Source of the DNA: Macrostomum lignano
Taxonomy: Eukaryota
Assembly (NCBI GenBank): GCA_002269645.1
Contig: NIVC01001281.1
Location: 102,101-166,100 of the forward strand
Length of the DNA: 64,000 nt
Reading direction: 5' to 3'
Shown: piece after piece, positions 2,129 through 22,025 of the stretch
How positions within the stretch are numbered: the first letter of the stretch is position 1
Layout: each line of letters opens with the position of its first letter
The notes under the pieces: model-generated
Databases searched by the model: none
Told to the model about the DNA's origin: nothing
The model's input: the letters and a program-made list of their open reading frames with translations, nothing else
Made by a program: the position numbers and the translations under genes

Positions 2129-2990
2129 GACAGCCATCCTGCAATCAACTTTAACCAGAAGCCCGTCAGGTATAGACAGCCATCCTGCAATCAACTTTAA
2201 CCAGAAGCCCGTCAGGTATAGACAGCCATCCTGCAATCAACTTTAACCAGAAGCCCGTCAGGTATAGACAGCCATCCTGCAATCAATTTTAACCAGAAGC
2301 CCGTCAGGTATAGACAGCCATCCTGCAATCAAATTTAACCAGAAGCCTTTCAGGTAGACAGCCATCCTGCAATCAACTTTAACCAGAAGCCCGTCAGGTA
2401 TAGACAGCCATCCTGCAATCAACTTTAACCAGAAGCCCGTCAGGTAGACAGCCATCCTGCAATCAAATTTAACCAGAAGCCCGTCAGGTATAGACAGCCA
2501 TCCTGCAATCAATTTTAACCAGAAGCCCGTCAGGTATAGACAGCCATCCTGCAATCAAATTTAACCAGAAGCCTTTCAGGTAGACAGCCATCCTGCAATC
2601 AAATTTAACCAGAAGCCCTTCAGGTAGACAGCCATCCTGCAATCAAATTTAACCAGAAGCCCTTCAGGTAGACAGCCATCCTGCAATCAAATTTAACCAG
2701 AAGCCTTTCAGGTAGACAGCCATCCTGCAATCAACTTTAACCAGAAGCCCTTCAGGTATAGACAGCCATCCTGCAATCAAATTTAACCAGAAGCCCTTCA
2801 GGTAGACAGCCATCCTGCAATCAAATTTAACCAGAAGCCCTTCAGGTAGACAGCCATCCTGCAATCAAATTTAACCAGAAACTCGTCGAGACAGCCATCC
2901 TGCAATCAACTTTAACCAGGAACTCGTCAGGTAGACAGCCATCCTGCAATCAACTTTAACCAGAAACCCGTCAAGTAGACGGCTATCCTG
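2129..2990. repeat. Minisatellite, 44/46-bp unit, ~19 copies
   Basis: GACAGCCATCCTGCAATCAACTTTAACCAGAAGCCCGTCAGGTA(TA) repeats; successive starts at 2129 and 2175. Confidence 0.95.
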
Positions 2991-3611: not shown

Positions 3612-6600
3612 CTTGGCAAGATTCTGCACCTCCACGAAGCGTGCCGTCAACACGCGGTGCCAAGCGGGCAACCGGAGCAACCCGGTTGGCAAAGCAGAAT
3701 CGGGGGGGGGGAGAGAGGCCCGTAGCCTCGGCGTAACAGCCGCGGTCTATGGGCAAACCTCCTCGCAACAGAGTGGCTTGGACCTAACCGACCCAGGCAC
3801 CTCTCGAAACAACAGTAAGGTTGAAAGCTTTGCCGAAAGTGAGAGAGAGAGTGAGGAACTGCTGCGGAAAATATCAAAAAAAAACAAAAAAAAGAAGGAG
3901 CATGAAGCGAACAAGGAAGAGAGTAATTGCACGTACCCAGAAAGCAAGGAAAGGCGAAGGGCTGAAATCAGCAGAGCGCTCGAGACCATCGAAAAGAACC
4001 CAGGACCGAGGCGTCCAGCACAAAAGACGGCACGGAAGCTCAGACGAACCACACGACGAAAAAAGGTACGAGATAGGAAAGCGAGAGAGAAGGCCAGGAG
4101 GGCAAATGAGAGGTGGCACAATAACGACATAAAGCTAGCGACGTGGAATATGCGCAGAGCGAACGTAGGAAGCGGAAGGTTCGGCGAGGTCGTTAAGTAC
4201 GCGATAGGAAAGGGATGGGACGTCACCCTCCTATCCGAACTTGACACACCTGGCGTTGGCATCAGAAGCTACCATCACAGAGAAGCAGAGATGCACCTAG
4301 TCCACTCCCAGAAGGTGGGAATGCTTCTGGGAGAAACAGCCTGGACAATGTGGAACGAAACTGGGAGGAAGATGCACCCGATGAAACGAACACTTGCGCT
4401 GGAAATAGGCGGAGTGATCCTGATAGCCGTATACCAACCGGTCAAGAAGGGTAAAGAGTACGAGGAAGAAGTGGATGAGATCCGAGAAGAAATCGAAAGG
4501 ATGCTGAACACCTTTGCAAAGAAGGCTGTACTAATCATCGGTGGAGATTTCAACGCCAGCGTTGGGAGCGGAGTGCACCGTCTCTCGAGCACAGGCCGTT
4601 ATGGAATCGGACCAACGAACCAACAGGGTGAAGACCTACTTCTTTGGCTAGAAAGCCTAGGCCTGGCATGGGCGAGCACCTTCTACAGGCAGAAGAAGCA
4701 AGGCACCTGGCGGAACCCGAGGTCACACCAATGGTACGAGATTGACGGCTTCATCACCAAGAAAGAGCAGAGACACCGGATCATCGGGAGCATCAGGACC
4801 GACCACGATCCGAATCACCATACGAGGTCCGACCACCTACCGAAGGTCATCACCATGAAGAGAAGATTCGCGGAGAGATGCGCGGAACCAACCAGGAAGT
4901 ATCCAAAAAACCAAAAAAACGAAATCGCCTGGGACCGGCTCCGCGATGTCGGCGTACGCGAACTATACAGAAATAAGACGGAGGAAGTGCTAGCTGGAAA
5001 GGGCGAGACCGACTGGGAAACGACGAAACAAACGATGCTTGAAGCCGCGAGAGAAATCTGCGGCCCAAAGACGAGACAGACGAACCCGTGGATGGTAGGG
5101 CACGAAGAAGAGCTGGCAGAACTTAACAAAGAAGTGGAGCACGCCCTGAGCGCCCGCAACCGAGTTAAGAAGTCACCCGAAGGGACCCTAACAGTAGAAG
5201 AGCGGACGGTGGCCTTGACCCGAGCCACACAAGGGCTGAAAGAGAAGCGGGGAAAGCAGAAGAAGAAACTCCAAGAGTGGATGGAACAGTGGTGGATGGA
5301 GATTGCCGAAGAGTGCAAGCGGAACTGCGACACGGGAAACGTGGCTGGGATGTACGACTGTTTGCGGAAGATGGGCAGGAACACAAAGCAAAATGAGAAC
5401 AACAGCAGAACAGTACCACTGTTCACGGCGGAAGACTTCAAGGAACACCTGTCAAAGATCCAGGAGCAACGGTTCGAGAACGACCAGGAGGAAATGCTCA
5501 ATCTAATTAGGTCAGCCCCAAAGCCAAGCGTAGACAAGGCTACGATAGAGGAAGCCAATGACCGGCTGTCCAGACCACTAACAAACAAAGAGATCGACGA
5601 CGAAATCAAAAAGATCAAAGACGGGGCCCCGGGCTTAGACGGCATCCGAATGCGCTACATCACCAGCGCGTGCGCAATGGCCCAAGCGGAGGTCCGGAAA
5701 GTAGTGCACTACATCTGGAACAACCCAGCGGACACCTGGGAGGAGGACCAGAAAGTAGGTGTAATCATGCCACTCCACAAGAAAGGCGATCGGACGAACC
5801 TCAATAATTTCAGAGGGATCTGCCTCCTACCAGTCGCAAGCAGGATACTCGCTCGGATACTGGCGACGAGGCTGAGCTCATGGACGGAGAACATGGGTCT
5901 GCTAGACGACAACCAGTTCGGTTTCCGGAGCGGCCGGTCCACTATGGATGCGACCCAGATCATACTCAGACTGAACGAGGACGCCGAGAAGATCAGAGAG
6001 AGCCCAGAATGGGCAGAGTCGATGGATACCAGCCTAGTCTTGCTAGACCTTAAGAAGGCCTACCCGCGGGTAAACAAGCCGGCTCTTTGGGAACTGCTGA
6101 AACATCAGCACATGCCGGAGCGCACGATAAAAAAGCTGGCAGACCTGCACGAGTACACCGCGTACACGGTACGGTGCGGCGCAGAGACAAGTTCCGAATT
6201 TTACCCACAACGCGGGCTGAGAGAAGGCTGCGCCACATCGCCTATCCTCTTCAACATCTATCACCAGACGGCGATACGGATAGCAAAAGAGAGGCGCATG
6301 GAAAAAGCGAAGAACACCGGGGCCGAATGCGGAATCAAGTGGGTTTGCCGACCGGGCAAATGCTTACCGCCTAAAAAGATGGGAGGTTACAACGAAGAAG
6401 CGGCGGAGATAACAATCACAGAAGTACTGTTCGCTGACGACACCACTATTGTCGGGGGATCCGAGGAAATCGAGCAAGGGACGAGAACCGTCATCGAGAC
6501 CATCGGAATCCTAGAAGAACGGACGAACGATGAGAAGGAAGAGCGAGCTAAGCTAGGAACACCTGAGAGTCAGAACATCCGGATACTGGGCACCTGGATC

Positions 6601-7788
6601 GGCAGAAAGCAGGACACCGCCCAGCGGCTGCAGAGAGCTGCCAAAGCGTGGGCGGGAGTCAAATGCATGCTACGCAAAACACGACTAAGCAAACGCACCC
6701 AAGCTAGGATCATAGAGACCTGTGTTGAGAGCACGATGCTCTTCAATGCAGGCGCCCGGCCCTTCCACAAGTCGGAAATTAAGCGGATGCAGCAGGCAAT
6801 GGACCGTCGTTATCGGTACGTGTGGAGCAGCAAGACCGAACCACCGCTAAAAGAAATGGAGAGAAAAAAAGTGAACATGTGGGACGTGCGGAACGAACTG
6901 CGGGTCCGAAGCATCGGCGCCAAAGTCGAATCGGCCCACTGGCGCAGGCTAGGCCACGTACTCAGACTCCCGGATACCAGCACCGTCAAAAGATGTGTCC
7001 TCGGCTGGAGCAAGAAGCTGACTACCATCAAGAAAGCGCGGAAGAGAAGGCAGACCATCATCTCGGTATGGAGAAAGCTACTGCGCACGGCAGAAATCGA
7101 TGAGCTGGAGGTCGAAAGGCTGGTGACCGATAGAGAGGCTTGGAGAAAGAAGTTACGCATCAGGGAAAGAGCGCTGGAGGAGAGCGAGAGGAAGAAAGGA
7201 AAGAAAGCAGAGACGACTGAGGAAGAAACAGCACAGGAAAGAGAAGCCGGAGAAGTGGAATCGGAGCTGACCGGGTACAGGTGCAATTACGAGAACTGCG
7301 GGAAGGTGTGCGCGTCGAGAGCCGGGTTAGCCGTACACCAACGGAGGATACACCATCAATTTACGAAGACACCGCTGCCGTGCCTAAAGTGCAACGCTAC
7401 CTTCTTCACGGAGGCGACAAGAAAAAACCACCAGAAGAGGTGCGGAGGAGAGGAGCGATCGGCGAAAGAAGTCCACTGCGGAGAGTGCAACAAGTGGATA
7501 AGCAAGTCCAACCACGCACGGCATAGGAAACGGTGCAAGGAGAACGGAAGGAAACCAGAGGCGGGCGCGACACCGGACGAGAGGGCAGAAGAAGCAGCAG
7601 TACCAACGGGGAGAGGCCAGCAGACGACGGGGATTACGGCGCGGATCTACAAGAGCGCCAGAGCTCCGTGCCCGGACTGCGGGAGGATGCTGGCCCGCAC
7701 GAACATGGCCAGACATCGAAAGACCTGCCAGTGAGTCGGCGGCAGAGCGTCCACGCCGCGAGGCGAGAAAAGGACTGAAGAAGAAGAA
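3612..7788 (+). mobile_element. RTE-clade-like non-LTR retrotransposon (LINE), apparently intact and recent
   Basis: Perfect 13-bp TSD GACTCGTCGGTGG at 3599-3611 and 7789-7801; (GAA)n tail at ~7777-7790; one long ORF; 3' UTR only ~50 nt. Clade assigned from motif appearance, not phylogeny. Confidence 0.92.
3613..7734 (+). CDS. LINE polyprotein: APE endonuclease, reverse transcriptase, C-terminal zinc fingers
   Basis: APE motifs TWN, LSEL, YQP, GGDFNA, EIDGF, SDHLP; RT motifs QFGFR, DLKKAY, GLREGCATSP, LFADD; RLGHVLR thumb region; terminal CxxxxC..H..H plus three CxxC..H...C motifs. No stops or frameshifts. First in-frame ATG is at 4150. Confidence 0.95.
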   Translation: MARFCTSTKRAVNTRCQAGNRSNPVGKAESGGGREARSLGVTAAVYGQTSSQQSGLDLTDPGTSRNNSKVESFAESERESEELLRKISKKNKKKKEHEANKEESNCTYPESKERRRAEISRALETIEKNPGPRRPAQKTARKLRRTTRRKKVRDRKAREKARRANERWHNNDIKLATWNMRRANVGSGRFGEVVKYAIGKGWDVTLLSELDTPGVGIRSYHHREAEMHLVHSQKVGMLLGETAWTMWNETGRKMHPMKRTLALEIGGVILIAVYQPVKKGKEYEEEVDEIREEIERMLNTFAKKAVLIIGGDFNASVGSGVHRLSSTGRYGIGPTNQQGEDLLLWLESLGLAWASTFYRQKKQGTWRNPRSHQWYEIDGFITKKEQRHRIIGSIRTDHDPNHHTRSDHLPKVITMKRRFAERCAEPTRKYPKNQKNEIAWDRLRDVGVRELYRNKTEEVLAGKGETDWETTKQTMLEAAREICGPKTRQTNPWMVGHEEELAELNKEVEHALSARNRVKKSPEGTLTVEERTVALTRATQGLKEKRGKQKKKLQEWMEQWWMEIAEECKRNCDTGNVAGMYDCLRKMGRNTKQNENNSRTVPLFTAEDFKEHLSKIQEQRFENDQEEMLNLIRSAPKPSVDKATIEEANDRLSRPLTNKEIDDEIKKIKDGAPGLDGIRMRYITSACAMAQAEVRKVVHYIWNNPADTWEEDQKVGVIMPLHKKGDRTNLNNFRGICLLPVASRILARILATRLSSWTENMGLLDDNQFGFRSGRSTMDATQIILRLNEDAEKIRESPEWAESMDTSLVLLDLKKAYPRVNKPALWELLKHQHMPERTIKKLADLHEYTAYTVRCGAETSSEFYPQRGLREGCATSPILFNIYHQTAIRIAKERRMEKAKNTGAECGIKWVCRPGKCLPPKKMGGYNEEAAEITITEVLFADDTTIVGGSEEIEQGTRTVIETIGILEERTNDEKEERAKLGTPESQNIRILGTWIGRKQDTAQRLQRAAKAWAGVKCMLRKTRLSKRTQARIIETCVESTMLFNAGARPFHKSEIKRMQQAMDRRYRYVWSSKTEPPLKEMERKKVNMWDVRNELRVRSIGAKVESAHWRRLGHVLRLPDTSTVKRCVLGWSKKLTTIKKARKRRQTIISVWRKLLRTAEIDELEVERLVTDREAWRKKLRIRERALEESERKKGKKAETTEEETAQEREAGEVESELTGYRCNYENCGKVCASRAGLAVHQRRIHHQFTKTPLPCLKCNATFFTEATRKNHQKRCGGEERSAKEVHCGECNKWISKSNHARHRKRCKENGRKPEAGATPDERAEEAAVPTGRGQQTTGITARIYKSARAPCPDCGRMLARTNMARHRKTCQ

Positions 7789-9146
7789 GACTCGTCGGTG
7801 GTGTCGCTGGATAGCGTGACGGCCAGGGCGGCGGCGCTGGCTCAGCACCGACGAATGAGCCGCATTGCCATGCAGCAGCAGCAGCAGCAGCAGCAGAAGC
7901 AGGAGGAGCCGGATATTCGTCAAGAGCAGTCGCTGCATCTCGAAGTGCCGTCGACTGGCCTAAAAGGTGTTGAAAATGCTGGATTTTTAAGGTCACCGGC
8001 TTCTTGAAGTTTTTCATGTTACATATACATTACATTCATATTAGCTCGTATATTACTCGAGATAATTAATTTTTCTTTGTCAGAGCAAGGTTTATTTGTT
8101 GTTAATTACCAGAGTCTGATACATACGAAAGAAACAAATTGCATATCGGTGCATTATTTGGCTGGGTTTATCCAAGAAAAATTTTCAACTTCGGATGTAT
8201 TGTTCTGAACGTGCATGTCATGCAGCTTGTATTGGTTCATTTAACAATTTTTCCTGTAGATATACGTAAAAGCCACGCTCTGTGTGCAATATACTGTTGA
8301 ATTACTGTTTAAAATTCACTAATATTGATCAACTTCCTTTTCTAGGAAACGAATATACCACACTGAATCATACGGGGAACAACAGTTTCCAGAGTATATA
8401 TAATTCTTTGCCTTTTGTTGCTCCTACATCTCCCAAAAAGTGCTAGCCATATTTGAACCAGCTGGATAAACTTTGTGTTCTACGCCGGTACAGCAACAAT
8501 GCCGTTAGGAAATATGCGGGAGGGCTAGCTGAGAGTAACCCACACGTCTCGCCCATGGCCACATTTAATACTTAACTCGTGCACAGCAAACTGGCCTGGG
8601 GGGCGGCTTGTCTTGCAATTCACGCTCACCCGAGTCAACCACCAAGGCACAGACGCGAAAGTCGGGGCCGCTGTGCACTCATTGGATGTGTACTTATCCG
8701 TGCGCGTGCTCAGGGATCAGCGGAATGAGGATAATTGTATGCCTCCTCGTTGGCTGTGGGTCGACTGCGGCCTTGATTTTCGGTGGGTCTGTAATTCTTG
8801 CCCGCTCCGTTAACTTTTTTCCGGTGACATTTTCACGGTGACGTTTTCACAGTGACGTTTTCCCTGTGACGATTAACCTATTCGTAGTTTCACTGATACC
8901 TGCACGAAAGTCCCTGTGCTTTTAAATAGTCGTCAGGCTAGCTCGTATTAACAGCTGTCTCTGGCTAACTGTTTTTAGTAAGCTTTGTGATGAAAACGTG
9001 CTTTTTACTATCATATGTCTACAATAACAACTACACATTGGGCTCTCACCGTACGTGTTACTATTAGTAGAATGATAGTGTTCTTAATAATTTTTTCTAT
9101 TGACTTTTTATTATTATATTCCGTTATTACATTTGCTGCCGTTATT

Positions 9147-9192
9147 CAAGGACGACTAAAGTAACGTATATATACTACTTAAGTAGTCCTTG
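9147..9192. mobile_element. 46-bp TIR-only element or excision footprint (P-like CAAGG termini), 8-bp TSD CCGTTATT
   Basis: CCGTTATT (9139-9146), CAAGGACGACTAAAGTA, ACGTATATATAC, TACTTAAGTAGTCCTTG, CCGTTATT (9193-9200). Confidence 0.8.
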
Positions 9193-9304
9193 CCGTTATT
9201 ATTAGGACGCAGTCCTAAGTATTTTCATCACCAAAGCAAATATTGTCAGGCAAACCTGACCGATAAAACGTCATCGGTACAACTTCATCGGTAGAACGTC
9301 CACC

Positions 9305-9343
9305 CAAGGACGACTAAAGTAACGTATACTTAAGTAGTCCTTG
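9305..9343. mobile_element. 39-bp TIR-only element or excision footprint (P-like CAAGG termini), 8-bp TSD CGTCCACC
   Basis: CGTCCACC (9297-9304), CAAGGACGACTAAAGTA, ACGTA, TACTTAAGTAGTCCTTG, CGTCCACC (9344-9351). Confidence 0.8.
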
Positions 9344-9545
9344 CGTCCACCAGGAAAACGTCATCGGTAAAACGTCAAAGCTAGGAAAACTTCATCGGTA
9401 AAACGTCCATCAGGGAAACGTCATCGGTAAAACGTCTCTGGGAAAAGGTCTCACGGGAAAAGGTAACCGGTAAAAGGTCACCGTGAAAAGGTCCACTAAG
9501 AAAACTTCATCGGTGCGTCCACCAGAAAAACGTCATCGGTAAAAC

Positions 9546-10019
9546 CATAGGCGTAGGAACGTTTCAAAAACTGGGGGGGGGCAGGTTCAGTGACGGATTT
9601 AGGGGGGGGGGGGGCGCACAGGGCGCACGCCCCCGTCGAGTTAGATTTTTTTATATGGAAAATGCACACTATCATGTACCGATTTTTTTCAGAATCCATC
9701 TTGTCAGCACTCATTTTAGTGCCGCAGGCCCGCATTTTAGCGCTGCAGGCACTCATTTTGGCGCTGCAGGCACTCATTTTAGCGCCACAGGCCCGCATTT
9801 TAGCGCCGCAGGCACTCATTTTGGCGCTACAGGCGCTATGTTTTGTCGCCCTGCAGCAAAATGCATTCATGCAAAGCAGCAAAAACCAAAAATAAGCAAG
9901 AAGTCTACATTTTACATTTAAAATGTGGAGGGGCCAGATACCATTACTGCCCCCCCCCCATTTTGAAAAGTGGGGGGCCATGGCCCCACTGCCCCCCCCC
10001 CCCTGTTCCTACGCCTATG
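9546..10019. mobile_element. MITE (hAT- or P-type), 474 bp
   Basis: Perfect 15-bp TIR CATAGGCGTAGGAAC / GTTCCTACGCCTATG; 8-bp TSD GGTAAAAC at 9538-9545 and 10020-10027; internal ~21-bp GCACTCATTTTGGCGCTGCAG repeats. Confidence 0.88.
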
Positions 10020-10454
10020 GGTAAAACGTCCACCAGAAAAACGTCATCGGTACAACGTCCACTAGGAAAACGTCATCGGTAAAGCGTCATCGGGAAAAGG
10101 TCCACCGGGAAAAAGTCACCGGGAAAAGATCACCGGGAAAATGACTCACCTGGAAGATGGGCAGCGCCAAAGCTTCATGCAACTGACTAACGACTAAGTA
10201 TGTGCATGTAGACGGATCACGAAAGGTTAGCTCCCACCAGCTGGAGGAGTCTAATTTACTAGCCCACCATATACTAAATTTGGTGCTTTTGGCTGAACTC
10301 AGTACTCTGGAACGAAAATATCCTTATTAATTATCATTAGTACAACGGTTTCTTCGAACAGTGTTGTATCCAGGATTTTCATTTTGGGGGTGCCAAAGTT
10401 TTACCTGGGGGTGTTTATGTATTCAGTCCTTGTATTTTATGGACTGGTGGGGGT

Positions 10455-10780
10455 GTAACCTTTTTTGGCGTGGGGGGGATGCTTGCTATCTGGGGGATGC
10501 TTGCTATCTGGGGTTGCTTGCTATCGGGTGGATGCTTGCTATCTGGGGGATGCTTGCAGTCTGGGTGATGTTTGCTATTTAGGGATCGATGCTTGAATGC
10601 TGTCTGGGGATGCTTGCTGTCTTGGGATGTTTTGTTTTTAGAGGAAATGTCTGTTGCTTTTTCATGAAGGCTTTATTTCGCTGTCTATTTGTTATTTCTC
10701 TTGGAGTCTTTATTTGTAAAGAACAAGGATTCTATCCTGACTATCCAGATGTCCCCCATCGGGGGGCGAAGATTGCTTGT
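10455..10780 (+). mobile_element. Non-autonomous Helitron 3' fragment with GGGGGATGCTTGCTATCT repeats
   Basis: Short tandem repeats related to 45240-45280, then hairpin CCCCC-ATC-GGGGG and GAAGATTG-CTTG-T, a variant of the GTAGATTG-CTAG-T end at 46012. Confidence 0.55.
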
Positions 10781-11484
10781 ATGTATGCTGTCTAATATAC
10801 TAAAAATGAAATGCTTGGTTGCTTGCTTGTAATTGATTTTCTCCCGAACGGCTCAACCGATTTTCTTCAAACTTGCACCATTCGATCAGAAATTTTCCCG
10901 GGACAGTACATGCATATTGGCTAAGAAATTGCTCAATGTTAAAGGGATTAAATATTCGAAAAACATGATTTTTTGCAAAGGTCAAGCAGCTCTTTCGACC
11001 TGAAATGCATTGTAAGAATGCTAGAGAAAAAACTGACTGACTGAATTCCGATTGTGATAAAGATTGCATCACAACAAGTTGAAAACAGTGCCGAACAAAT
11101 GCACACAAAACTTGAATGAAATTGCGTAACCATATTGCCAACTTAAATTCAGACTGATTCTGGCTGACTGAGAAATTGATTATGTCATAATTTTTTACTC
11201 CAATTGACTTGCTGTAAGAATTGAATTATAAGGGCCACAATTCATGTTCTCCAATTGAAAAGAGATAGCCAAGAAAGATGCGAACAGACTGGACTGCTAC
11301 TGTAGATGATGGAATAGCCGATGTGTAGGCACTAGGAATTGGTTATAGGCTTGGCTAGGGTTCGATTCTGCACTGCGTCAAATTTCAGCCAGTAGTGATT
11401 GAAGATTATTTAAATTTATTTTTTTCATTCACTTCGTAAATAAAATATTATCTGACTTTGAATCATTGCAAAAATAGAGCTTGA

Positions 11485-11865
11485 ATCAGACTAAACCAGA
11501 GTTTAAATCATGGCTAAACCAGAGTTTAAATCATGGCTAAACCAGAGTCTGAATCATGGCTAAAACCAATGTTTGAATCATGGCTAAACCAGAGTCTGAA
11601 TCATGGCTAAACCAGAGTCTGAATCATGGCTAAAACCAGTGTTTGAATCATGGCTAAACCATTGTTTGAATCATGGCTAAACCAGAGTTTAAGTCATGGC
11701 TAAACCATCGTTTGAATCATGACTAAACCAGAGTTTGAATCATGGCTAAACCAAAGTTTGAATCATGGCAAAACCAGAGTTTGAATCATGGCTAAACGAG
11801 AGTCTGACTCATGGCTAAACCAGAGTTTGAATCATGGCTAAACCAGAGTTTGAATCATTGCAAAA
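11485..11865. repeat. Minisatellite, 23-bp unit
   Basis: AAACCAGAGTTTGAATCATGGCT, about 16 copies. Confidence 0.92.
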
Positions 11866-12271
11866 CCAGTTTTGTTAAAAGTGATACTGATTATCACTGA
11901 TATTGATGATATCACTGATATCAGTGATACTGGTAACTCTGATAAGAATTTCACTATGTCAAAAGTACATAGCTGTATCAACCCACTGGCGAGACAGTCA
12001 TAAATAGATTACATTCACAGTTTTTTTCACTGGCTGGCGCAGACCAGTGTACATTGTGAGCCCTCTGCCCCGGAATTTGGACACACGGGCCTGGAGAGCC
12101 CACACCCCAAATCATAGGTTTTTAGATTTAGACCCCTTTCTTCTTTATCGATTTTTCAGTTTCTACCCTGCGTCTTAAGATAAGCTCCAATTCAGCCCAC
12201 TGGATGATAAATAGCCTGTAATAGTTTGGCTCAAGGGCACCTTATCTGATTCTTCAGACATCCAAATTCAG

Positions 12272-12414
12272 TTGACCTGGCTGTCGGTTGCTTCACTCAT
12301 GGTCAGCTGTACACGGCGCTGTCACGGGCGAAGAACGCCGCGAATGTTCGCGTCCGGATCTGTGGCACCAAGACCAGAAACGTGGTGTATCCAGAAGTGC
12401 TCACTGGAGATTAG
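12272..12414 (+). pseudogene. Helitron PIF1-like helicase terminal exon (fragment)
   Basis: After acceptor AAATTCAG (AG at 12270-12271): DLAVGCFTHGQLYTALSRAKNAANVRVRICGTKTRNVVYPEVLTGD*. Contains the FxHGQLYxALSR motif VI and T.N.VY.EV C-terminus typical of Helitron RepHel. Not listed in the ORF track in this frame. Confidence 0.85.
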
Positions 12415-12675
12415 GCGATTTCCAGGCGTCATTGAAGTGAGTATTACTTGTGTCATTTTGTCTGTGAGTGTCGCATTGGTATCTGTGTTTAATAGTGATC
12501 ACAAGTAGTTTATCCTGATATGTAAATGGCCCGCTGAGACATATCAGGCAAATCCTGCTTTATTCACCTAATAAATTCAAATTAGATGGGATCATAATGG
12601 AATTGAGATCAGGGATTACCTAGGCAAAATGATTAGCTAAATTGGGTTCATTGCATAACAGAACTGAGCATAACA

Positions 12676-13710
12676 GATCCCAATCCTAAATTCATAGAAT
12701 CTCTTAGATCCCAATGCTAAATTCATAGAATCTCTTAGATCCCAATCCTAAATTCACAGAATCTCTTAGATCCCAATGCTAAATTCACAGAATCTCTTAG
12801 ATTCCAATCCTAAATTCATAGAATCTCTTGAATCCCAATCCTAAATTCACAGAATCTCTTAGATCCCAATCCTAAATTCATAGAATCTCTTATATCCCAA
12901 TCCTAAATTCACAGAATCTCTTAGATCCCAATCCTAAATTCACAGAATCTCTTAGATCCCAATCCTAAATTCATAGAATCTCTTAGATCCCAATCCTAAA
13001 TTCACAGAATCTCTTAGATCCCAATCCTAAATTCATAGAATCTCTTATATCCCAATCCTAAATTCATAGAATCTCTTAGATCCCAATCCTAATCTCATAG
13101 AATCTCTTAGATCCCAATCCTAATCTCATAGAATCTCTTAGATCCCAATCCTAAATTCATTGAATCTCTTAGATCCCAATCCTAAATTCACAGAATCTCT
13201 TAGATCCCAATCCTAAATTCACAGAATCTCTTAGATCCCAATCCTAAATTCACAGAATCTCTTATATCCCAATCCTAAATTCATTGAATCTCTTAGATCC
13301 CAATCCTAATCTCATTGAATCTCTTAGATCCCAATCCTAAATTCATAGAATCTCTTAGATCCCAATCCTAAATTCACAGAGTCTCTTAGATCCCAATCCT
13401 AAATTCATGGGATCTCTTAGATCACAATCCTAAATTCACAGAATCTCTTAGATCCCAATCCTAAATTCATAGAATCTCTTAGATCCCAATGCTAAATTCT
13501 TAGAATCTCTTAGATCCCAATCCTAAATTCACAGAATTTCACAGAATCTCTTAGATCCCAATGCTAAATTCAGAGAATCTCTTAGATCCCAATCCTAAAT
13601 TCATAGAATCTCTTAGATCCCAATCCTAAATTCATAGAATCTCTTAGATCCCAATCCTAAATTCATAGAATCTCTTAGATCCCAATCCTAAATTCACAGA
13701 ATCTTATATA
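12676..13710. repeat. Minisatellite, 31-bp unit, ~33 copies
   Basis: GATCCCAATCCTAAATTCA(T/C)AGAATCTCTTA; starts at 12676 and 12707. Confidence 0.95.
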
Positions 13711-13822
13711 TCAATCCTAGATCATTGCTTAGCCTAATTGGGTTCATTGCATAACAGAACTAAGATCATTGCTTAGCGTAATTGGGATCATTTGGCATAA
13801 CTAAGTTGGGATCCTTGCATAC

Positions 13823-14681
13823 TAAATTGGGATCAAGGCAAACCAGAATAGGATCGGATACAATCGGATCCCAATTTAGTTGTGCCATGAAAGTTAATAA
13901 GTAATAGTGAAATTAATGTAGGTAAATATTAGGTGAATATATAGCAGGTTGGCTGCATATCAATGGGCCTTGAGATTGTGGTTGAAATAACGTGTTCGCT
14001 GCTTTTTCACGATTCAGAGGTTCTTCCACTCTAAAACTGAGGGTATGCAGCCATGAGAGAGAGGTTTGAAGCAGCTTCAGCAAACCTAGAGACTTGTGAT
14101 AGCTAAGCTTTTTGTGTGACGTTGAGTGCGTGAACTTAACTTGCCCCAGTGAATGCCTCTGACCAGCAGTGCAGAGTAAAGCAAGCCAACAAGCAGTAGG
14201 ATTGACACCATTATTCTTGCAGTCAAATGCAATGAACTGTGCAATGATACTGTCTTGTTGGCGGAGCAATCTGCGAATTCATCATCTCTACTGTCTTTGT
14301 AAGTAAGTATTCACAAAGCAATTATTAAACTCATCAGTTGTCATTGAATTCCCTTATTTATAATATGTTATTTTGCATACTTTCATATGGATGTTTGTTT
14401 AGTTAAAAACTTTCAATTAAGCTCCAAAACTTCATTTTAGGTTCTAAATTGATCATAGCAATGAGCTGTGTCAGTTAAGTTTCTTATTTTCATTTAGGAG
14501 TAAGAAAAAGCAACACGAAACACTTATTTATCCAGTAAACAGAATTATTTATTTTATTTATTTAGAATTCTTTAAATTCTCAAACACATAAATAAAAAAA
14601 TCAAGAAATCATATCAAGTTAATTCCACAAACAAATTGAATTTAATTATTCCGCTGCTGCTGCTGCTGTTGCTGCTGTTGC

Positions 14682-14725
<44 letters not shown>

Positions 14726-16385
14726 CTGCTGCTGCAGCCGCATGTCGGCCAGGTCCGGACACCGGGCCACAGGGTGACCTCCACCGCAGAGATAACAGGC
14801 CACTGTTAAGTTTGGAAAGTGCAATTTTACTCAACAGGTGGTTTCGAAAGACTTAATTACAGTAATGAGACTTACTAGGTTTTCTAGGGTGTCCACCACC
14901 GCGGCCTCCTCGCCGCCTGCCGCCGCCGGAAAAGAAGTTCTGGGTAAACTTCATTTGTGGAACAGTGGAGTTAAACAGTGGAACTATACAGTGGAAATTA
15001 TACGAGCGTGTCGTACGCTCACTCTGGTTTATATACGCTCACTCATGTCAAGCAAGGATTAGCGAGATTGGTTTGAAAACCTTGCTAACGAAATGAAACT
15101 CATTTCATTTTTTTAAAGCCCGTTTCAGCTTAGGCAAAAATGAATACCAGCTTAGGGCCACCCCCAACCCCAGTTAAAATCGTGTGAGGCTTCATTGGTG
15201 AGCGTCATGAGGCTTTAGCTGTTTGTGATTACTGAAAAGTCGCACTAGGTTGGGGCTTGCACTGGCAGTTTAATGAAATCACTTTAGTTGAATACAAAGT
15301 TTACTGCTATTGGCTGACTTGAAACCCTCTATTTTTAGCCACGTTAGCCACACGCCGCACTGGCTTCCCAATTACAGTGTACATTTAAGATCTTTTTTGT
15401 GTCCTATTATTGAAGTGTGTCGAAAACAGATTGCATAACAAGTCGCACCACACTCGACTCTGACACCCCACACAGTGTACATAAAGAAAGAACGTAAAAG
15501 CTAAGGCAATCACCAGCCAATCCACAACAAGTAGCCCAGTGGGTGGATTAGAACAAAACTCTCTCTGATTGGTTAGCCAGATCTAAATTGATCTTTACAT
15601 GGCACCCTCTATTGGCATGAGTCATCACAGATCACAGTTAGGGTTGTCCGAAACGAAATGCTGCAATATAAACTGGCACAATTGGCCTTGATGCTAAAAC
15701 TATCAAACCACAAACCGTAAAGACCTTATCAGTGAAATTTTTATAATCCATATTTTTGGCAACTATCAATCGAGCAATATGGAGTCAACCGAAGGAGCCA
15801 AGAAAAGCAAAGCGTGTATCTCTGCTCTGCTTCCGGGCCTGATGCACGCTGCAATCGTTGGCCTCGTAATGAGGCTGTCCAAAATCACGGACTGAAAGGA
15901 TTGAGATCCTTTCATAACTAGATTGAGATCATTGCATAACTAGATTGGGATCAAGGCAAACCAGAATAGGATCGGATACAATCGGATCCCAATTTAGTTG
16001 TGCCATGAAAGTTAATAAGTAATAGTGAAATTAATGTAGGTAAATATTAGGTGAATATATAGCAGGTTGGCTGCATATCAATGGGCCTTGAGATTGTGGT
16101 TGAAATAACGTGTTCGCTGCTTTTTCACGATTCAGAGGTTTTTCCACTCTAAAACTGAGGGTATGCAGCCATGAGAGAGAGGTTTGAAGCAGCTTCAGCA
16201 AACCTAGAGACTTGTGATAGCTAAGCTTTTTGTGTGACGTTGAGTGCGTGAACTTAACTTGCCCCAGTGAATGCCTCTGACCAGCAGTGCAGAGTAAAGC
16301 AAGCCAACAAGCAGTAGGATTGACACCATTATTCTTGCAGTCAAATGCAATGAACTGTGCAATGATACTGTCTTGTTGGCGGAGC
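13823..16385 (+). repeat. Direct duplication of ~440 bp (13823-14268 and ~15944-16385)
   Basis: Near-identical from ATTGGGATCAAGGCAAACCAG to GATACTGTCTTGTTGGCGGAGC; one substitution noticed (GTTCTTCC vs GTTTTTCC). Confidence 0.9.
14642..14824 (-). other. Gag-like CCHC zinc-knuckle fragment followed by a (CAG/CAA)n polyQ tract
   Basis: CYLCGGGHPVARC (Cx2Cx3Hx4C) then ~28 Q; no ATG start; probable retroelement gag remnant or captured exon. Confidence 0.4.
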
Positions 16386-18270
16386 CTTCTGCAAGTGCAT
16401 CATGTTTACTGTTTGTGGGTAATATTTTTAGGTGCAATGCAATTTTTTCTTTTTTCATTGAACTGAATCCCATTACTGTCCCATTACTGTCGTTTTCTGA
16501 CATTACTCAGTAGTCACAACTTGTTTCTGTCGAAAAAATAATTTAACAAACGAAAGAGGAAAATCGCTGAATTCTCTACATTTGGAGTTTGTTTTCTTAT
16601 AATGTCATAATGATATGTATTTGTATAATAATAATTTTGCCAGATGCTCACTCAATTGTTGTTGTTTTGTTGTTTTCAATGTGTTTTGCAATTGAAGAAA
16701 TACAAAAAATGTTTCAGTGGACAAAGACCAGTCCCATGATTCATGAATCTGCACACCTGGTACCTGCCTTATTCTATTTTAAAAGATAAATTGTCAGGCA
16801 TGCATTTATAATGAAGAATGATACAAAATGGATTACTAAGAAAAGAGGTCAGATGAGAAATAGGATCTGATCAGAACTGGAATCATTAAGAAAAAGAAAG
16901 GAGATTAGAAATTGATCCATTGATATTTAATTAGCCATTGATATGAGCTAACCATTTTGAACTATCAAAATGGATCTAATTTGAAATAGACTTTTATGTC
17001 ATATAGGATTTGATTCAAAATAAGATTTGACAATGTGAATGAGGCATATAAGAAAAGAGAAGTCTGCTGAGGAGTGTGACTAGAAAAGAAAGGGGGAATT
17101 TAGCATGATAATATATATCATATATCATGCATATATATAGCCAATGTTAGCTTTATTAAAAGTGTCAAACCAAAGGTCGAAGGATGTAGCTCCAGTTGCT
17201 TTTGCAAAGTCCATTCACAATGAGATAGCTGCATTGAACTGACTCTTTAAGTCATTTATTATAATAAGAGGGGCCTCATTCAAGGGCAATAGTTGCAATG
17301 CTGAGCTACTTATTGTTCGGAACATTGCAGTCGCAGTTAGTACGATGAGCAGGGCTAAGAAATTCACTTACAAATGAAGAAAGTAAAAAATTTCTCGGGA
17401 TGTGTATAAAACTGTAGTACACATGAGCAATACAAGCAACAAGAAAATCGGAATAAAGCAAGTCATTTCTCGGAAAGTCGCAATTTCTTGGAATATTATT
17501 TAATTTATTTTCAGTAACAACTAAAAAAGTGATCTCAACAGTTTTATAAACTAAATAAATAAAATAATTTTTATCAAACACGTTGACATATACAGGGCTC
17601 TAAACTAAAAAACTGTAAAAAGTTGATAGTTTTGTTTTACCTAAAATGCGTTATTAACGATCTCCAAAAATTCCTATTTTAAGCTTAAGCTTAAGAAAAA
17701 CACTTAAAGTACTCCTGCTAAAAGGTATATTATATTAGACGAATATTAATTATTTCTGCTCCCCGAAGGGGGGCAAAACTTTAGCTAGTACTGTACTAAT
17801 ATTAGTAAAAAAATTCCAGAAGTAGCTCGTAAAACTTGTTTTTGTAACGCAGTTCCTATCTTGCTTGAGCAGCGTTGAGCTGTTATCAGTTTTTTTACTA
17901 TTCAATGCTATCTTCGTACACCTGGACTGGGAGTTGGACAGAGGGGAGGGAGGGCCAATGTACACTCAGCACCACTGCGCGGAGTGTACATTGCTGCTGT
18001 CGGCTCTGAACGAACTCTAACCCCCCCCCCGCTCGCTAGTTTTTCAGTAGTCAGCAAGTTCAGTTTAATTCAGCTTGGCTAGATTTCCGTCTGTTAAAGG
18101 TTTGGGGCTTGGTTGGCTAGACAAAGTGGCCGAGACTATTTAGGACCGCCCGTGGCGCGCAATAAAAGATCAGAATTTTTTTACTAGCCTCTATTTGTAG
18201 GAGCTAACAAACCATTTATCAACCCCTAAAACAAACTAGTAATCAAGCAATCTAAAATCACGACAAAAGC

Positions 18271-21200
18271 ATGCAAGCCGTGCTGGATTCAATCAAGTGG
18301 ACGCCCGAGCTTGGCCTGGGCCTGGCCGAGGTGGTTGTCTACGTGGCCATCGCCGGTCTAGCAGCTTTCCGGCTAGTGAAAACTAACGAGCGCCTGCTGG
18401 TGTTCTGGCTAGTCTACAACGGCCTCACACACTTCCTTATGGTAAGTTTTGCTCTTACTGCCTAGCTAGTCGCTGCCCAAGGACGTCTAAACGGGGTCAA
18501 CCGCCGACAAAATGTCCGGTAGAAGGACCAAAACCAACCCCTCCCAGGCACTACTAGAAAGACCACAACCAACCCCTCCCAGGCACCGCTAAAAGGACCA
18601 CAACCAACTTCCCAGGCACCACTAGAAGGACCAGACCACAACCAACCTCTCCCAGGCACCATTAGAAGGACCACAACCAACCCCTCCCAGACACCACTAG
18701 AAGGATCACAACCAGCCCCTCCCAGGCACCAATAGAAGGACCACAACCAGCCCCTCCCAGGCACCACTAGAAGGACCACAACCAGCCCCTCCCAGGCACC
18801 ACTAGAAGGACCAGACCACAACCAACCTCTCCCAAGCACCACTAGAAGGACCAGAACCAGCCTCTCCCAGACACCACTAGGAGGACCACAACCAGCCCCT
18901 CCCAGGCACCACTAGAAGGACCAGAACCAGCCTCTCCCAGACACCACTAGAAGGACCACAACCAGCCCCTCCCAGGCACCACTAGAAGGACCAGACCACA
19001 ACCAACTCCTCCCAGGCACCACTAGAAGGACCAGAACCAGCCTCTCCCAGACACCACTAGGAGGACCACAACCAGCCCCTCCCAGGCACCACTAGAAGGA
19101 CCAGACCACAACCAACCTCTCCCAGGCACCACTAGAAGGACCACAACCAGCCCCTCCCAGGCACCACTAGAAGGACCACAACCAGCCCCTCCCAGACACC
19201 ACTAGAAGGATCACAACCAGCCCCTCCCAGGCACCACTAGAAGGACCACAACCAGCCCCTCCCAGACACCACTAGAAGGATCACAACCAGCCCCTCCCAG
19301 GCACCACTAGAAGGACCACAACCAGCCCCTCCCAGACACCACTAGAAGGACCACAACCAGCCCCTCCCAGACACCACTAGAAGGACCACAACCAGCCCCT
19401 CCCAGGCACCACTAGAAGATCAAAACCGACGAGTGCTCAGGGACCACTACATCTGTAAAAGGACCAGGACCATCTCGTGTTTATAGAACGTGAACTTGTA
19501 AACTTGTGGTTCTTAGGGGGCGCTTTCACTAGGCCGAAACTTCACTGCCGAAAAATCATTTTAGCAGCCCCTTTCACTAGGCCGAAACTTCACTTTGCCG
19601 AAACTAACATGGTAACATTAAACTGAATCTTTAATCATTAATCATTATTATCATTATATGATGATGATGATGATTATTATTATTATTATTATTATTGATT
19701 AATCATTAATCATTATTATTAATCATTAATCATTAACAGACCTTAGAGATCTAGAACTAGAACCTACTAGATCTACGGGTCCTTGCACAGACCAATAACA
19801 GACAACAGACCAGGCCTGCATAGGGCTCGTTCCCGCTAGCGGCTAGACTGAAGGGTATGAGCGAGCAATTTAGGAAAAAAATGGGGAAGAGAGGAGGGAG
19901 ATTATGGGGCATATAAAAATCATATACTATTGTACATTGTCTTTTTGATACTAAAAACATACGGGTTGAATTTCACAGAAGCCAAAGAATTAGAGACTAA
20001 GAGCCATGCATATTCTATGAATCGGAATCCAGGCAAATCTGCATGCTTTCAAAGGAGCCCATGCGAGCATACGAGCACTCTACAACTTAAAAGTCCATCC
20101 GACTGAGACAGAAAATGCAATCAAAATAATAAGCAATCAAAGTTAACCCCAAATGAAGTAAGGAATGTTAAAAATATTCCATAAAAAACTGAGTGACCAT
20201 ATCGTGCTGGCCTACTTTGGTAGCAGAGTAACACTTAGGTCAAAATAAAGAAACTGGTGCAGAGAAATCGTCACTGCTTGCGGTTCCATTTTGGACGCTT
20301 AAGTTCACATCCCCTTTTGACCATAGTAAGGACGCAGCTAAAATGATTTTTCGGCCTAGTGAAGTTTCGGCCTAGTGAAGTTTCGGCCTAGTGAAAGAGG
20401 CTGCTAAAATGATTTTTCGGCAAAGCGAAGTTTCGGCCTAGTGAAGTTTCGGCCTTTTGAAAGAGCATGCTAGTCATTTCGGCAAAGTGAAGTTTCGGCC
20501 TAGTGAAGTTTCGGCCTAGAGAAAGACTATGCTAAATGATTTTTCGGCAAAGTGAAGTTTCGGCCTAATGAAGTTTCGGCCTTGTGAAGGAAGATGCTTT
20601 CGGCAAAGTGAAATTTCGGCCTAGTGAAACCCCCCCCCCCGTTCTTAGGAAGATTTTAAACGACTAGCCCCATAAGACAGAACATCTAGTTTCGAGAAAT
20701 TTAAGTATCTCGAATGAACAATGAGGTGGCTACATGTATACATTGTGGCAGTATGTTTAGATGAATGTATTTAATAACGAGTGTTGACACTGACAGTGAC
20801 ATTTCCTTAAAACTTACTCGCCCCATATTTCTGTGTACTTTTGACAAAAATCGACTAAAATATTGTTTAGGAAATTGTTACACACTGTTGAAAGCAGTTT
20901 TTTTTAATATGGAAAGTTAAACGCTTAATTTAGTATTCAACAATCTAATTTATGCAGGAGGGTCGGTTTGTGTACTATTCTTTGACTACAACGGCGGAGA
21001 ATGCTACTGGACCTCTGGCTCACGTTTGTAAGCAATGATGAAGCGGATGATTAATCTAAGTCAATTTATTCTTTATTAAAATACGCCTTCTTAACGCCTT
21101 TTGATTTTATGCATTACACTCAGACTTAACTTCTCATAACTGAACCCATCACTCTCCCTGAACCTATATCGCTGAATCCTGAACTGATCCCCCTGAGCGC

Positions 21201-22025
21201 ATCCTCGCCGTCCCCAGGGAAGGAGTACGGTGCCGCCGATGTCCGCTGGCTGTGGGCTGAGCAAAACATCGTTGCCATGGAGATTGTCACCGTGCTACTA
21301 GACGGCAGTCTGTGTTTCGCAATCATCTGGGCCATTAAGACTCACAGTCCTAATAGGCACTTTATGCAAGTCGTACTCTGCACCTGCGAGCTCTACGGGA
21401 GTAAGTTAAAAGGAATAACTCGTCATAAATACTTGTAACAAGATTTTGTACAGAACCGAAATATCTTAGCAAAGTTGGCGGCACTACTTAGTAAGTAGCT
21501 AGTACATCGCTTTCTGATCTTTTCTTTCGCTTTTCTGATCTTTCTTTAAAAATTGCCACTATAATTCAGCCTTTTTAGCACTTCAAAATACGAATACTAT
21601 ATATATGACTCTAAAAATGCTGAAAACTTTAAAACTCTTGAAATGATATTTTTCTGCTGACAGCGGTAAATTCTGAACTATAAGGATTTGGAACTTCTCA
21701 AATTTAATAAAGTGGTTTTTCAAGAGATCACGAAAGGTTAGGTCCCCCCGGGGGGTCTAATTTGCTAGTCCACGTATACTAAATTTGACTGAGGTGTGTT
21801 GTTATTCATGTCAACTAGAACCTCTCGACTTCGTTTTCAGACTGGATGACTTTCGCACCCGAGTGGCTGTCCGGCAACAAGAACCTGACTGACGACCCCT
21901 TCAAAGTTTGGTTCCACCTGTTCTTCTTTAACTTCCTGTGGGTTGTGTTTCCTCTGCTCATGCTGATCCAGTCCTACAAGGCGCTGTCGCATCCCAAGGT
22001 CATCCAGTCGAGGAAGACCAGATAG
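18271..22025 (+). CDS. EBPL: Emopamil-binding-protein-like (EXPERA/EBP family) membrane protein, 4 exons, 202 aa
   Basis: Exons 18271-18441, 20958-21027, 21218-21400, 21841-22025, all GT-AG and phase-compatible. Motifs WLVYNGLTHFLMEG, WKEYGAADVRW, MEIVTVLLDGSL, RHFMQVVLCTCELYG, WMTFAPEWL, FFFNFLWVVFP match EBPL. Confidence 0.9.
18513..19420. repeat. Minisatellite, 35/40-bp unit, in EBPL intron 1
   Basis: AAGGACCACAACCAGCCCCTCCCAGGCACCACTAG repeats. Confidence 0.95.
19518..20640. mobile_element. Non-autonomous MULE/foldback-like TIR element in EBPL intron 1
   Basis: 9-bp TSD GTTCTTAGG at 19509-19517 and 20641-20649; inverted ends TTTCACTAGGCCGAAACTTCAC / GTGAAATTTCGGCCTAGTGAAA with repeated subterminal copies; G..C termini. 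Confidence 0.75.
21726..21785 (+). mobile_element. Helitron 3'-end/5'-end junction fragment in EBPL intron 3
   Basis: Hairpin CCCCCC-GGGGGG, TCTAATTTG, CTAG (21765-21768), directly followed by TCCACGTATACTAAATTTG; homologous copy at 10217-10281. Confidence 0.55.

What the first reader, a model, noticed from the sequence alone, without database searches (positions are those of the whole stretch)
9139..9351. Two 39/46-bp elements consisting of exactly 17 bp + 17 bp of TIR with different 8-bp TSDs: P-like excision footprints or ultra-small transposons
Seen: both have left CAAGGACGACTAAAGTA and right TACTTAAGTAGTCCTTG (17-bp TIRs, 2 mismatches), spacers of 12 and 5 nt both beginning ACGTA, and each has its own perfect 8-bp TSD (CCGTTATT; CGTCCACC), about 110 bp apart. 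Known: P-superfamily ends are CANRG with 7-8-bp TSDs; Drosophila P transposase makes a 17-nt staggered cut so donor sites keep about 17 bp of each TIR; P elements hop locally. Inference: either these are fossil footprints showing the 17-nt cut chemistry and local hopping in a non-insect host, or, since the spacer start is shared, the ~40-bp unit is itself mobile and would be among the smallest TIR elements.
Basis: partly seen in the sequence, partly recalled or inferred. Interest (0 to 1): 0.75.

Follow-up and report, generated by a model that had tools for sequence, protein, structure and literature searches.

The report
Two tiny transposon relics, flatworm genome
Two 46- and 39-base inverted-repeat units, each flanked by its own 8-base duplication, are real leftovers of a cut-and-paste transposon in the flatworm Macrostomum lignano, but nothing shows that they record a 17-base P-element cut or that they jump as 40-base units.

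Summary
Element A (9147-9192, 46 bp) and element B (9305-9343, 39 bp) share 17-bp ends with the same two mismatches, and each has a perfect 8-bp target duplication. The ends occur nowhere else in the window (0.03 expected).

The window is Macrostomum lignano, assembly Mlig_3_7, contig NIVC01001281.1. Two paralogous copies of the locus, about 2.4% diverged, carry both elements at the same sites, base for base. So they are old and fixed, not polymorphic.

Removing B and one duplication copy restores a normal unit of the surrounding tandem array, so B is a true insertion.

A and B share 20 left-end bases, not 17. They differ only by a 7-bp slippage-type indel: (TA)4-CTA-CTT against (TA)2-CTT. The "17+17 plus independent filler" reading is therefore not supported.

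Most likely both are collapsed remnants of a short non-autonomous element with a TA-rich core, from the hAT or P superfamily. No partner element or transposase turned up in about 135 kb of M. lignano DNA. The genome itself could not be scanned, so P versus hAT, and relic versus mobile mini-element, stay open. Ordinary to mildly interesting.

The parts
9139..9146 (.). Left target-site duplication of element A (CCGTTATT)
   Evidence: It reads CAGTTATT in the two paralogous loci.
9147..9192 (+). Element A, 46 bp. Left end 9147-9163, core ACGTATATATAC 9164-9175, right end 9176-9192. An equally valid reading is L20 + (TA)4 + CTACTTAAGTAGTCCTTG.
   Evidence: 36/46 self-complementary; DNA hairpin -9.7 kcal/mol, z -4.1. 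Identical in L118 7842-7887 and L119 7807-7852.
9193..9200 (.). Right target-site duplication of element A (CCGTTATT)
9297..9304 (.). Left target-site duplication of element B (CGTCCACC)
9305..9343 (+). Element B, 39 bp. Left end 9305-9321, core ACGTA 9322-9326, right end 9327-9343. An equally valid reading is L20 + (TA)2 + CTTAAGTAGTCCTTG. It differs from A only by a 7-bp indel.
   Evidence: hairpin -10.6 kcal/mol, z -5.8. Identical in L118 8000-8038 and L119 7965-8003.
9344..9351 (.). Right target-site duplication of element B (CGTCCACC)
   Evidence: Joining the flanks with one copy gives ...GGTAGAACGTCCACCAGGAAAACGTCATCGGTAAAAC. This matches array units at 10020-10059 (37/40, no gaps) and 9502-9545.
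9265..9545 (+). Host tandem array of alternating ~14/15-bp units (AAAACGTCATCGGT / AAAACGTCCACCAGG), into which B is inserted. Unoccupied paralogous target sites CGTCCACCAG lie at 9516-9525 and 10027-10036. The array continues at 10020-10155. An inverted array lies at 8807-8874.
9202..9218 (.). TTAGGAC-GCA-GTCCTAA, a 17-bp palindrome built on the same AGGAC/GTCCT core as the element ends, 1 nt after A's right duplication. It may be a third, more eroded relic, or a target-site feature. Uncertain.
   Evidence: With a gap of 30 or less, AGGAC...GTCCT occurs only here and in B in the whole window (1.8 expected window-wide, so about 0.01 expected this close). This is a post hoc observation.

Best explanation
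A and B are immobile relics of two separate insertions of one family of short non-autonomous cut-and-paste elements in Macrostomum lignano. The family makes 8-bp target duplications and ends in CAAGG...CCTTG, so it belongs to the hAT or the P superfamily.

Inferred family structure: left end CAAGGACGACTAAAGTAACG, a TA-rich self-complementary core, right end (C)TACTTAAGTAGTCCTTG.

Inferred mechanism: a (TA)n tract is its own reverse complement. TA tracts just inside the two inverted ends are therefore also direct repeats of each other. Replication slippage, microhomology-mediated end joining, or abortive gap repair after an excision attempt would repeatedly delete everything between them. At independent sites this leaves the same kind of product: L20-(TA)k-R.

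Observed products: A keeps (TA)4-CTA. B keeps (TA)2 and is joined at the next TA.

Shown:
- two independent integrations with 8-bp duplications;
- a common left 20 nt and right 17 nt;
- a 7-bp TA/TAC indel as the only difference;
- fixation before a split of about 2.4% divergence between paralogous loci.

Inferred: that the inserted units were longer, and the route of collapse.
For: - The end pattern occurs four times against 0.03 expected, and each element has a perfect 8-bp duplication.
- The reconstructed empty site of B equals neighbouring array units, 37/40.
- A and B share positions 1-20 and the last 17 nt, including both arm mismatches (G/T at position 8, A/T at position 12). The only difference is TATACTA inside a TA/TAC run.
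- A is 36/46 self-complementary overall, so the inverted symmetry probably continued inward in the parent.
- Both elements are base-for-base identical in three paralogous loci whose flanks differ by about 2.4% (window vs L118/L119) and about 0.45% (L118 vs L119). So they are old and no longer changing.
- Internal deletion by abortive gap repair and microhomology is the documented origin of miniature elements, including the 80-bp Made1 (PMC3814204, PMC1784062).
- P needs internal binding sites beyond the terminal repeats (PMC7776569). hAT ends are known to need the same (own knowledge). A 5-12-nt interior cannot hold such sites.
Against: - No longer family member has been seen. There is none in the 64-kb window, and none in the parts of L117-L119 that add new sequence.
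- The parent structure with TA tracts at both ends is therefore an inference from two relics.
- Two independent collapses to nearly the same product is less parsimonious than copying one mini-element.
- None of the three paralogous copies retains a longer version.
Confidence: 0.5

Rival explanations
1. Mobile mini-transposon. A unit of about 46 bp or less (two 17-20-bp ends and a few core bases) was itself mobilised in trans and hopped locally, about 150 bp. B is a copy of A, or the reverse, that later changed by a 7-bp slippage.
For: - A and B share the same junction sequence (L20 + TA run + R17), the same arm mismatches and the same orientation. One copy event plus one indel is the most parsimonious history.
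- Each has its own perfect 8-bp duplication.
- Precedent for a miniature element that is almost only ends: Made1, 37+6+37 bp (PMC1784062).
Against: - Only two copies in 64 kb. There are none in the other M. lignano sequence fetched and no hit with paired ends in the public scans.
- 39-46 bp of duplex cannot bend to pair its own ends.
- P-type and hAT-type transposases need subterminal binding sites, which are absent here (PMC7776569; own knowledge for hAT).
- With a P-type 17-nt stagger, an excised B would be held together by only 5 bp.
- Both copies are fixed and identical in three paralogues, so there is no sign of recent mobility.
Confidence: 0.22
2. P-type excision footprints. Longer elements sat at both sites. 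A P-like transposase cut 17 nt inside each end. The donor ends, each keeping a 17-nt overhang, were end-joined with filler. A variant: B's gap was repaired using the neighbouring relic A as an ectopic template, which would explain the shared filler.
For: - The inverted symmetry is exactly 17 nt in both elements, the TSD is 8 bp and the terminus fits CANRG.
- The 17-nt stagger, local hopping and 8-bp duplications are established for Drosophila P (PMC7776569, PMC10983969).
- A neighbouring 474-bp element (9546-10019) also has an 8-bp duplication and a CATAG terminus, which fits the P rule but not the hAT rule.
- Neither TSD fits the hAT target preference nTnnnnAn (own knowledge of that rule).
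Against: - The 'filler' is not independent. ACG plus a TA run is shared, so at least 20 nt of the left end is common.
- All four overhangs would have to survive untrimmed.
- '17' is only where the symmetry stops. It would coincide with a cut site only if the parent's repeats were exactly 17 bp or longer with filler beginning right there.
- No P-like coding remnant in about 135 kb, by single-sequence tblastn and by a 49-sequence profile (best E = 1.1).
- No M. lignano protein among 150 relatives of the P catalytic core. That search only reaches sequences sharing 5-residue words, so this is weak evidence.
- No paralogue keeps an occupied site.
Confidence: 0.12
3. Not transposon-derived: a chance palindrome, an assembly or library artefact (adapter or linker), or a local duplication.
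For: - Both are short hairpin-forming palindromes.
- The assembly is long-read based and redundant (PMC5730564).
Against: - Two different perfect 8-bp duplications, and four end matches against 0.03 expected.
- Present identically in three separately assembled contigs with diverged flanks.
- No resemblance to the SMRTbell, Nextera or 454 linker sequences as I recall them (own knowledge, not run).
- The flanks of A and B are unrelated, so this is not a segmental duplication.
Confidence: 0.02

Closest known systems
Donor-site footprints of Drosophila P-element excision (17-nt staggered cut; Beall and Rio 1997, reviewed in PMC7776569)
   Same: Both 8-bp duplication copies are retained around a short pair of inverted terminal sequences about 17 nt long. 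Two events lie close together, as expected from local hopping.
   Different: - Here the sequence between the ends is shared by the two sites, and the common left part is 20 nt.
- No P-type transposase or full-length element is known for this family.
- The host is a flatworm.
- The relics are fixed in three paralogous loci rather than being recent revertant alleles.
Made1, the 80-bp human miniature element derived from Hsmar1 (37 + 6 + 37 bp; PMC1784062, PMC3814204)
   Same: An element that is almost nothing but two inverted ends around a few internal bases. It is a near-perfect palindrome, born by internal deletion at microhomology.
   Different: - Made1 is Tc1/mariner type: TA duplication, a transposase that needs only the terminal repeats, thousands of copies.
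- Here the duplication is 8 bp (hAT or P type), the unit is half that size, and only two copies are known.
Miniature elements of the P and hAT superfamilies (e.g. Anopheles P-related MITEs, PMC1562414; BuT5, PMC3698922; zebrafish internally deleted Pdre elements, PMC7776569)
   Same: Non-coding derivatives with the family's terminal repeats and 8-bp (7-9 bp) duplications, dependent on a transposase supplied in trans.
   Different: Those are hundreds of bp to about 1 kb long and keep subterminal repeats or binding sites. A and B keep only 5-12 nt between the ends.

Membership tests
P superfamily (Drosophila P, THAP9-type) | Target-site duplication of 8 bp (7-9) | tested here: met
   CCGTTATT x2 and CGTCCACC x2, perfect. 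The empty-site reconstruction for B matches array units.
P superfamily (Drosophila P, THAP9-type) | Termini 5'-CANRG (rule recalled from Repbase-type classifications, own knowledge) | tested here: met
   CAAGG at both ends. The same five bases also satisfy the hAT rule, so this does not discriminate.
P superfamily (Drosophila P, THAP9-type) | Partner element encoding a THAP + RNase H-like + GTP-binding-insertion transposase between the same ends | tested here: inconclusive
   - No P-like coding remnant in window + L117-L119: tblastn and a 49-sequence profile, best E = 1.1.
- The protein search with the P catalytic core returned insects only.
- The M. lignano genome itself could not be searched.
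P superfamily (Drosophila P, THAP9-type) | 17-nt staggered cleavage inside the terminal repeat | not testable with these tools
   The symmetry ends at 17 nt, but A and B share 20 nt on the left and a common TA run. The sequence alone cannot place a cut.
P superfamily (Drosophila P, THAP9-type) | Subterminal transposase-binding sites and internal inverted repeats (PMC7776569) | tested here: not met
   Only 5 nt (B) or 12 nt (A) lie between the ends. The relics themselves cannot carry such sites. The parent is unknown.
hAT superfamily | 8-bp target-site duplication and termini 5'-YARNG (own knowledge) | tested here: met
   8-bp duplications. CAAGG fits YARNG.
hAT superfamily | Target preference nTnnnnAn within the duplication (own knowledge; statistical, not absolute) | tested here: not met
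   CCGTTATT and CGTCCACC have neither T at position 2 nor A at position 7. With n = 2 this is only weak evidence against.
hAT superfamily | Partner encoding a BED-finger / DDE / hAT-dimerisation transposase | tested here: inconclusive
   tblastn with a recalled Hermes sequence found nothing in window + L117-L119. The Hermes sequence was not validated against a database, and the genome was not searchable.
Miniature inverted-repeat element (MITE) family | Short, non-coding, terminal inverted repeats, target duplication | tested here: met
Miniature inverted-repeat element (MITE) family | Many homogeneous copies dispersed in the genome | not testable with these tools
   Two copies in 64 kb. The same two appear in each of two paralogous loci. 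None in the rest of the fetched M. lignano DNA. No eukaryotic genome collection is available for pattern scans.
Excision footprint (any cut-and-paste family) | An occupied allele or paralogue at the same site, or independent junction sequences at independent sites | tested here: not met
   All three paralogous loci carry the same mini-elements. The junctions of A and B are shared except for a 7-bp TA/TAC indel.

The most novel reading that the evidence does not exclude
The unit of 46 bp or less (two 17-20-bp ends and a handful of core bases) is itself transposition-competent. That would make it the smallest eukaryotic terminal-inverted-repeat element known, about half the size of Made1, in a superfamily with 8-bp duplications whose members are thought to need subterminal binding sites. 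It would imply end pairing between different copies or molecules rather than within one element.
Probability: 0.2. Interest if true: 0.7.

Novelty: new member of a known kind. Interest (0 to 1): 0.3.

Why it matters
If a genome-wide census showed that these are P-type footprints, they would be natural, fixed evidence for the unusual 17-nt cut chemistry outside insects and vertebrates. They would also point to an undescribed P-like family in flatworms.

If the 40-bp unit proved mobile, it would reset the lower size limit for cut-and-paste elements and challenge the requirement for subterminal sites.

As the evidence stands, they are ordinary decayed ends of an unclassified DNA transposon family. 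They are useful mainly as a seed pattern for annotating that family in M. lignano, a transgenesis model in which an endogenous cut-and-paste system could be of practical interest.

Tried and rejected
1. Public pattern scans for the end motif in metagenome, prokaryote-genome and viral collections. They gave 83, 29 and 3 loci, all with single hits consistent with chance. A script found no correctly oriented second end within 3 mismatches in any locus. These collections do not hold the flatworm genome.

2. Exact-protein look-ups to find the source. The RING ORF was not on record. Of ten ORFs tested, one was, and it identified M. lignano and opened the paralogous loci.

3. I tried to rebuild the spliced EBP product by enumerating splice sites. 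The result was ambiguous, so I used a homology search instead.

4. The LINE ORF search found no M. lignano relatives, so it could not be used to sample the genome.

I did not pursue it by other means.

6. P transposase core against the protein collection: insects only.

7. tblastn and a profile search for P or hAT coding remnants in about 135 kb: nothing.

8. A Logan contig carrying an EBP relative turned out to be fungal and irrelevant.

9. Literature string searches for the end sequences of both the mini-elements and the 474-bp neighbour: no paper. Searches for the CANRG/YARNG rules: nothing usable, so those rules are cited as my own knowledge.

10. Artefact (adapter or linker) and segmental-duplication readings: rejected, see the rival explanations.

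Full report
**1. The observation**

- Element A lies at 9147-9192: CAAGGACGACTAAAGTA ACGTATATATAC TACTTAAGTAGTCCTTG. It sits between two copies of CCGTTATT (9139-9146, 9193-9200).
- Element B lies at 9305-9343: CAAGGACGACTAAAGTA ACGTA TACTTAAGTAGTCCTTG. It sits between two copies of CGTCCACC (9297-9304, 9344-9351).
- The degenerate end motif occurs at exactly these four places in 64 kb, against 0.03 expected. Allowing three mismatches adds one chance-level hit.
- Both elements have the same orientation and the same two arm mismatches.
- Both fold as DNA hairpins well beyond shuffled controls.

The description is accurate.

**2. Where this is**

The window is animal DNA. It holds a non-LTR retrotransposon ORF with endonuclease and reverse transcriptase domains, a paired-type homeobox exon and a RING-finger ORF. 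No Rfam family matches.

An exact-sequence look-up of ten ORFs found one in the public collection. Its cluster partner is annotated in Macrostomum lignano. The encoding contig is NIVC01001281.1 of assembly GCA_002269645.1, Mlig_3_7. Window position 1 is record position 102101.

That assembly is known to be redundant, because the sequenced DV1 line carries duplicated chromosomes: 180 Mb lies in blocks at least 95% identical (PMC5730564).

**3. Paralogous loci**

Through the neighbouring EBP-family gene I obtained the two other copies of the locus: L118 on NIVC01001620.1 and L119 on NIVC01000364.1.

- Both align to window 7780-10791.
- Substitution divergence from the window is about 2.4%. Between L118 and L119 it is about 0.45%.
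- Both mini-elements are present at the same positions and are identical base for base in all three copies.
- The only nearby difference is that A's left duplication reads CAGTTATT in L118 and L119.

So the elements predate the split of these copies. They show no presence/absence polymorphism, and no copy preserves a longer or empty state.

Zero substitutions between A and B over their 39 shared bases puts a loose upper bound of about 8% on their divergence (inference). They are therefore not very much older than that split.

**4. True insertions**

B lies inside a tandem array of alternating units, AAAACGTCATCGGT and AAAACGTCCACCAGG.

Joining B's flanks with a single CGTCCACC gives a sequence that matches neighbouring units 37/40 without gaps. 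Intact CGTCCACCAG sites exist at 9516-9525 and 10027-10036. This is direct evidence for integration with an 8-bp duplication.

For A there is no paralogous empty site. The argument rests on the perfect 8-mer.

The array is faced by an inverted array at 8807-8874. The whole stretch 8800-10160 looks like an older non-autonomous element with subterminal repeats. A, B and a third element have inserted into it.

**5. What the two elements share**

- They are identical over the first 20 nt (CAAGGACGACTAAAGTAACG) and the last 17 nt.
- Between these, A has (TA)4-C-TA-C and B has (TA)2-C.
- The sole difference is a 7-bp indel (TATACTA) inside a TA/TAC run, with TA microhomology.
- A as a whole is 36/46 self-complementary.

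Two consequences follow.

First, '17' is only the point where inverted symmetry first fails. The data do not mark a breakpoint there, and L20 + (TA)k + R is an equally good parse.

Second, the interior is not independent filler. ACG plus the TA run is common to both sites.

**6. Search for relatives and a partner**

- There is no further copy in the window, or in the parts of L117-L119 that add new sequence.
- Scans of metagenome, prokaryote and viral collections gave only isolated chance hits.
- The end sequences appear in no searchable paper.
- My recalled Drosophila P transposase was validated against PDB 6P5A.
- That sequence and a recalled Hermes sequence found no coding remnant in window + L117-L119 by tblastn.
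- A profile built from 49 P transposases found none in the six-frame translation either (best E = 1.1).
- The P catalytic core retrieved 150 relatives from the protein collection. All the named ones were insect proteins and none was from M. lignano. That search depends on shared 5-residue words, so it has little power here.
- The M. lignano genome itself is not in any collection that can be scanned by DNA pattern.

**7. Mechanism**

Established knowledge:
- Drosophila P transposase cuts 17 nt inside each 31-bp repeat, makes 8-bp duplications and hops locally.
- It needs internal binding sites and internal inverted repeats in addition to the terminal repeats (PMC7776569, PMC10983969).
- Internally deleted and miniature elements arise by abortive gap repair and microhomology-mediated joining (PMC3814204).
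- Made1 is an 80-bp example made of 37 + 6 + 37 bp (PMC1784062).

My preferred reading (confidence 0.5) is that longer, still short, non-autonomous members of one family inserted at both sites and collapsed in place.

- (TA)n is its own reverse complement. TA tracts just inside two inverted ends are therefore also direct repeats.
- Slippage or microhomology joining between them deletes the interior and recurrently yields L20-(TA)k-R.
- This explains the near-identical products without requiring a 40-bp unit to move.
- The step from 'longer insert' to 'relic' is inferred, not shown.

The main rival is that the mini-unit itself was copied (0.22).
- It is more parsimonious on sequence.
- It is physically awkward: 39-46 bp cannot pair its own ends and carries no subterminal sites.
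- With a P-type stagger, an excised B would be held together by only 5 bp.

The strict P-footprint reading (0.12) needs four untrimmed 17-nt overhangs. It also needs either a 1/64-or-worse coincidence in the filler, or ectopic repair of B from the neighbouring A.

**8. P or hAT**

- CAAGG satisfies both terminal rules, and 8 bp fits both.
- Neither duplication fits the hAT target preference (weak evidence, n = 2).
- The neighbouring 474-bp element ends in CATAG, which fits only the P rule.
- No transposase is linked to the family.

I leave this open, roughly even between the two, and do not file the elements under either superfamily.

**9. Verdict**

The specific inferences (17-nt chemistry, ultra-small transposon) are unsupported by the evidence obtainable.

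This is a new, unclassified member of a known kind of feature. Interest is modest unless the census in 'decisive next steps' turns up one of the two unusual outcomes.

Noticed in passing
window 9546-10019 (TSD GGTAAAAC at 9538-9545 and 10020-10027): A 474-bp non-coding element splits the same tandem array. It has perfect 15-bp terminal inverted repeats (CATAGGCGTAGGAAC...), an 8-bp target duplication, long G/C homopolymer runs and an internal 21-bp tandem repeat (9707-9834). Its CATAG terminus fits the P-type rule but not the hAT rule. It is also present in both paralogous loci, where the left TSD reads GGAAAAAC.
   Followed up: partly
window 8807-8874, 9265-9545, 10020-10155: Inverted arrays of about 14-bp motifs (TTTTCACGGTGACG on the left; AAAACGTCATCGGT / GGAAAAGGTCACCG on the right). 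They look like the subterminal repeat blocks of an older non-autonomous DNA transposon of about 1.3 kb, which received three later 8-bp-TSD insertions. Its termini were not defined.
   Followed up: partly
window 9202-9218: A 17-bp palindrome, TTAGGAC-GCA-GTCCTAA, uses the same AGGAC/GTCCT core as the mini-element ends and lies 1 nt after A's right duplication. It could be a third, more eroded relic or a target feature.
   Followed up: partly
window 3612-7779: A non-LTR retrotransposon with an intact 1373-aa ORF (endonuclease + reverse transcriptase), a (GAA)n tail and a target duplication of about 16 bp (GACGACTCGTCGGTGG). It is present in this copy of the locus but absent from both paralogous loci, so it is a recent insertion.
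   Followed up: partly
window ~10793-17779: A ~7-kb insertion absent from both paralogous loci. It has no target duplication, starts TC..., ends ...CTAG, and has a CCCCGAAGGGG hairpin about 15 nt before the 3' end. It is Helitron-like but flanked by G/T rather than A/T. It carries the annotated 79-aa gene at 14642-14954(-).
   Followed up: partly
window 49370-52050: A long satellite with a 16-bp period, about 168 units. It is strongly G-over-C skewed (GC skew 0.75 in 50-52 kb).
   Followed up: no
window 18516-19000 (first intron of the EBP-family gene, 18271-22025): A 35-bp tandem repeat array in the intron. Its length differs among the three paralogous loci: the gene spans 3.8 kb here against 4.9-5.0 kb in L118 and L119.
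   Followed up: no
window 2237-2890: About 650 bp of extra tandem-repeat units (ACAGCCATCCTGCAATCAA...TTTAACCAGAA...) relative to both paralogous loci.
   Followed up: no
window 45276-45965 vs 58542-61398: Blocks of about 30-bp-period repeats occur in inverted orientation about 15 kb apart, with arms up to 217 nt at 79-89% complementarity.
   Followed up: no
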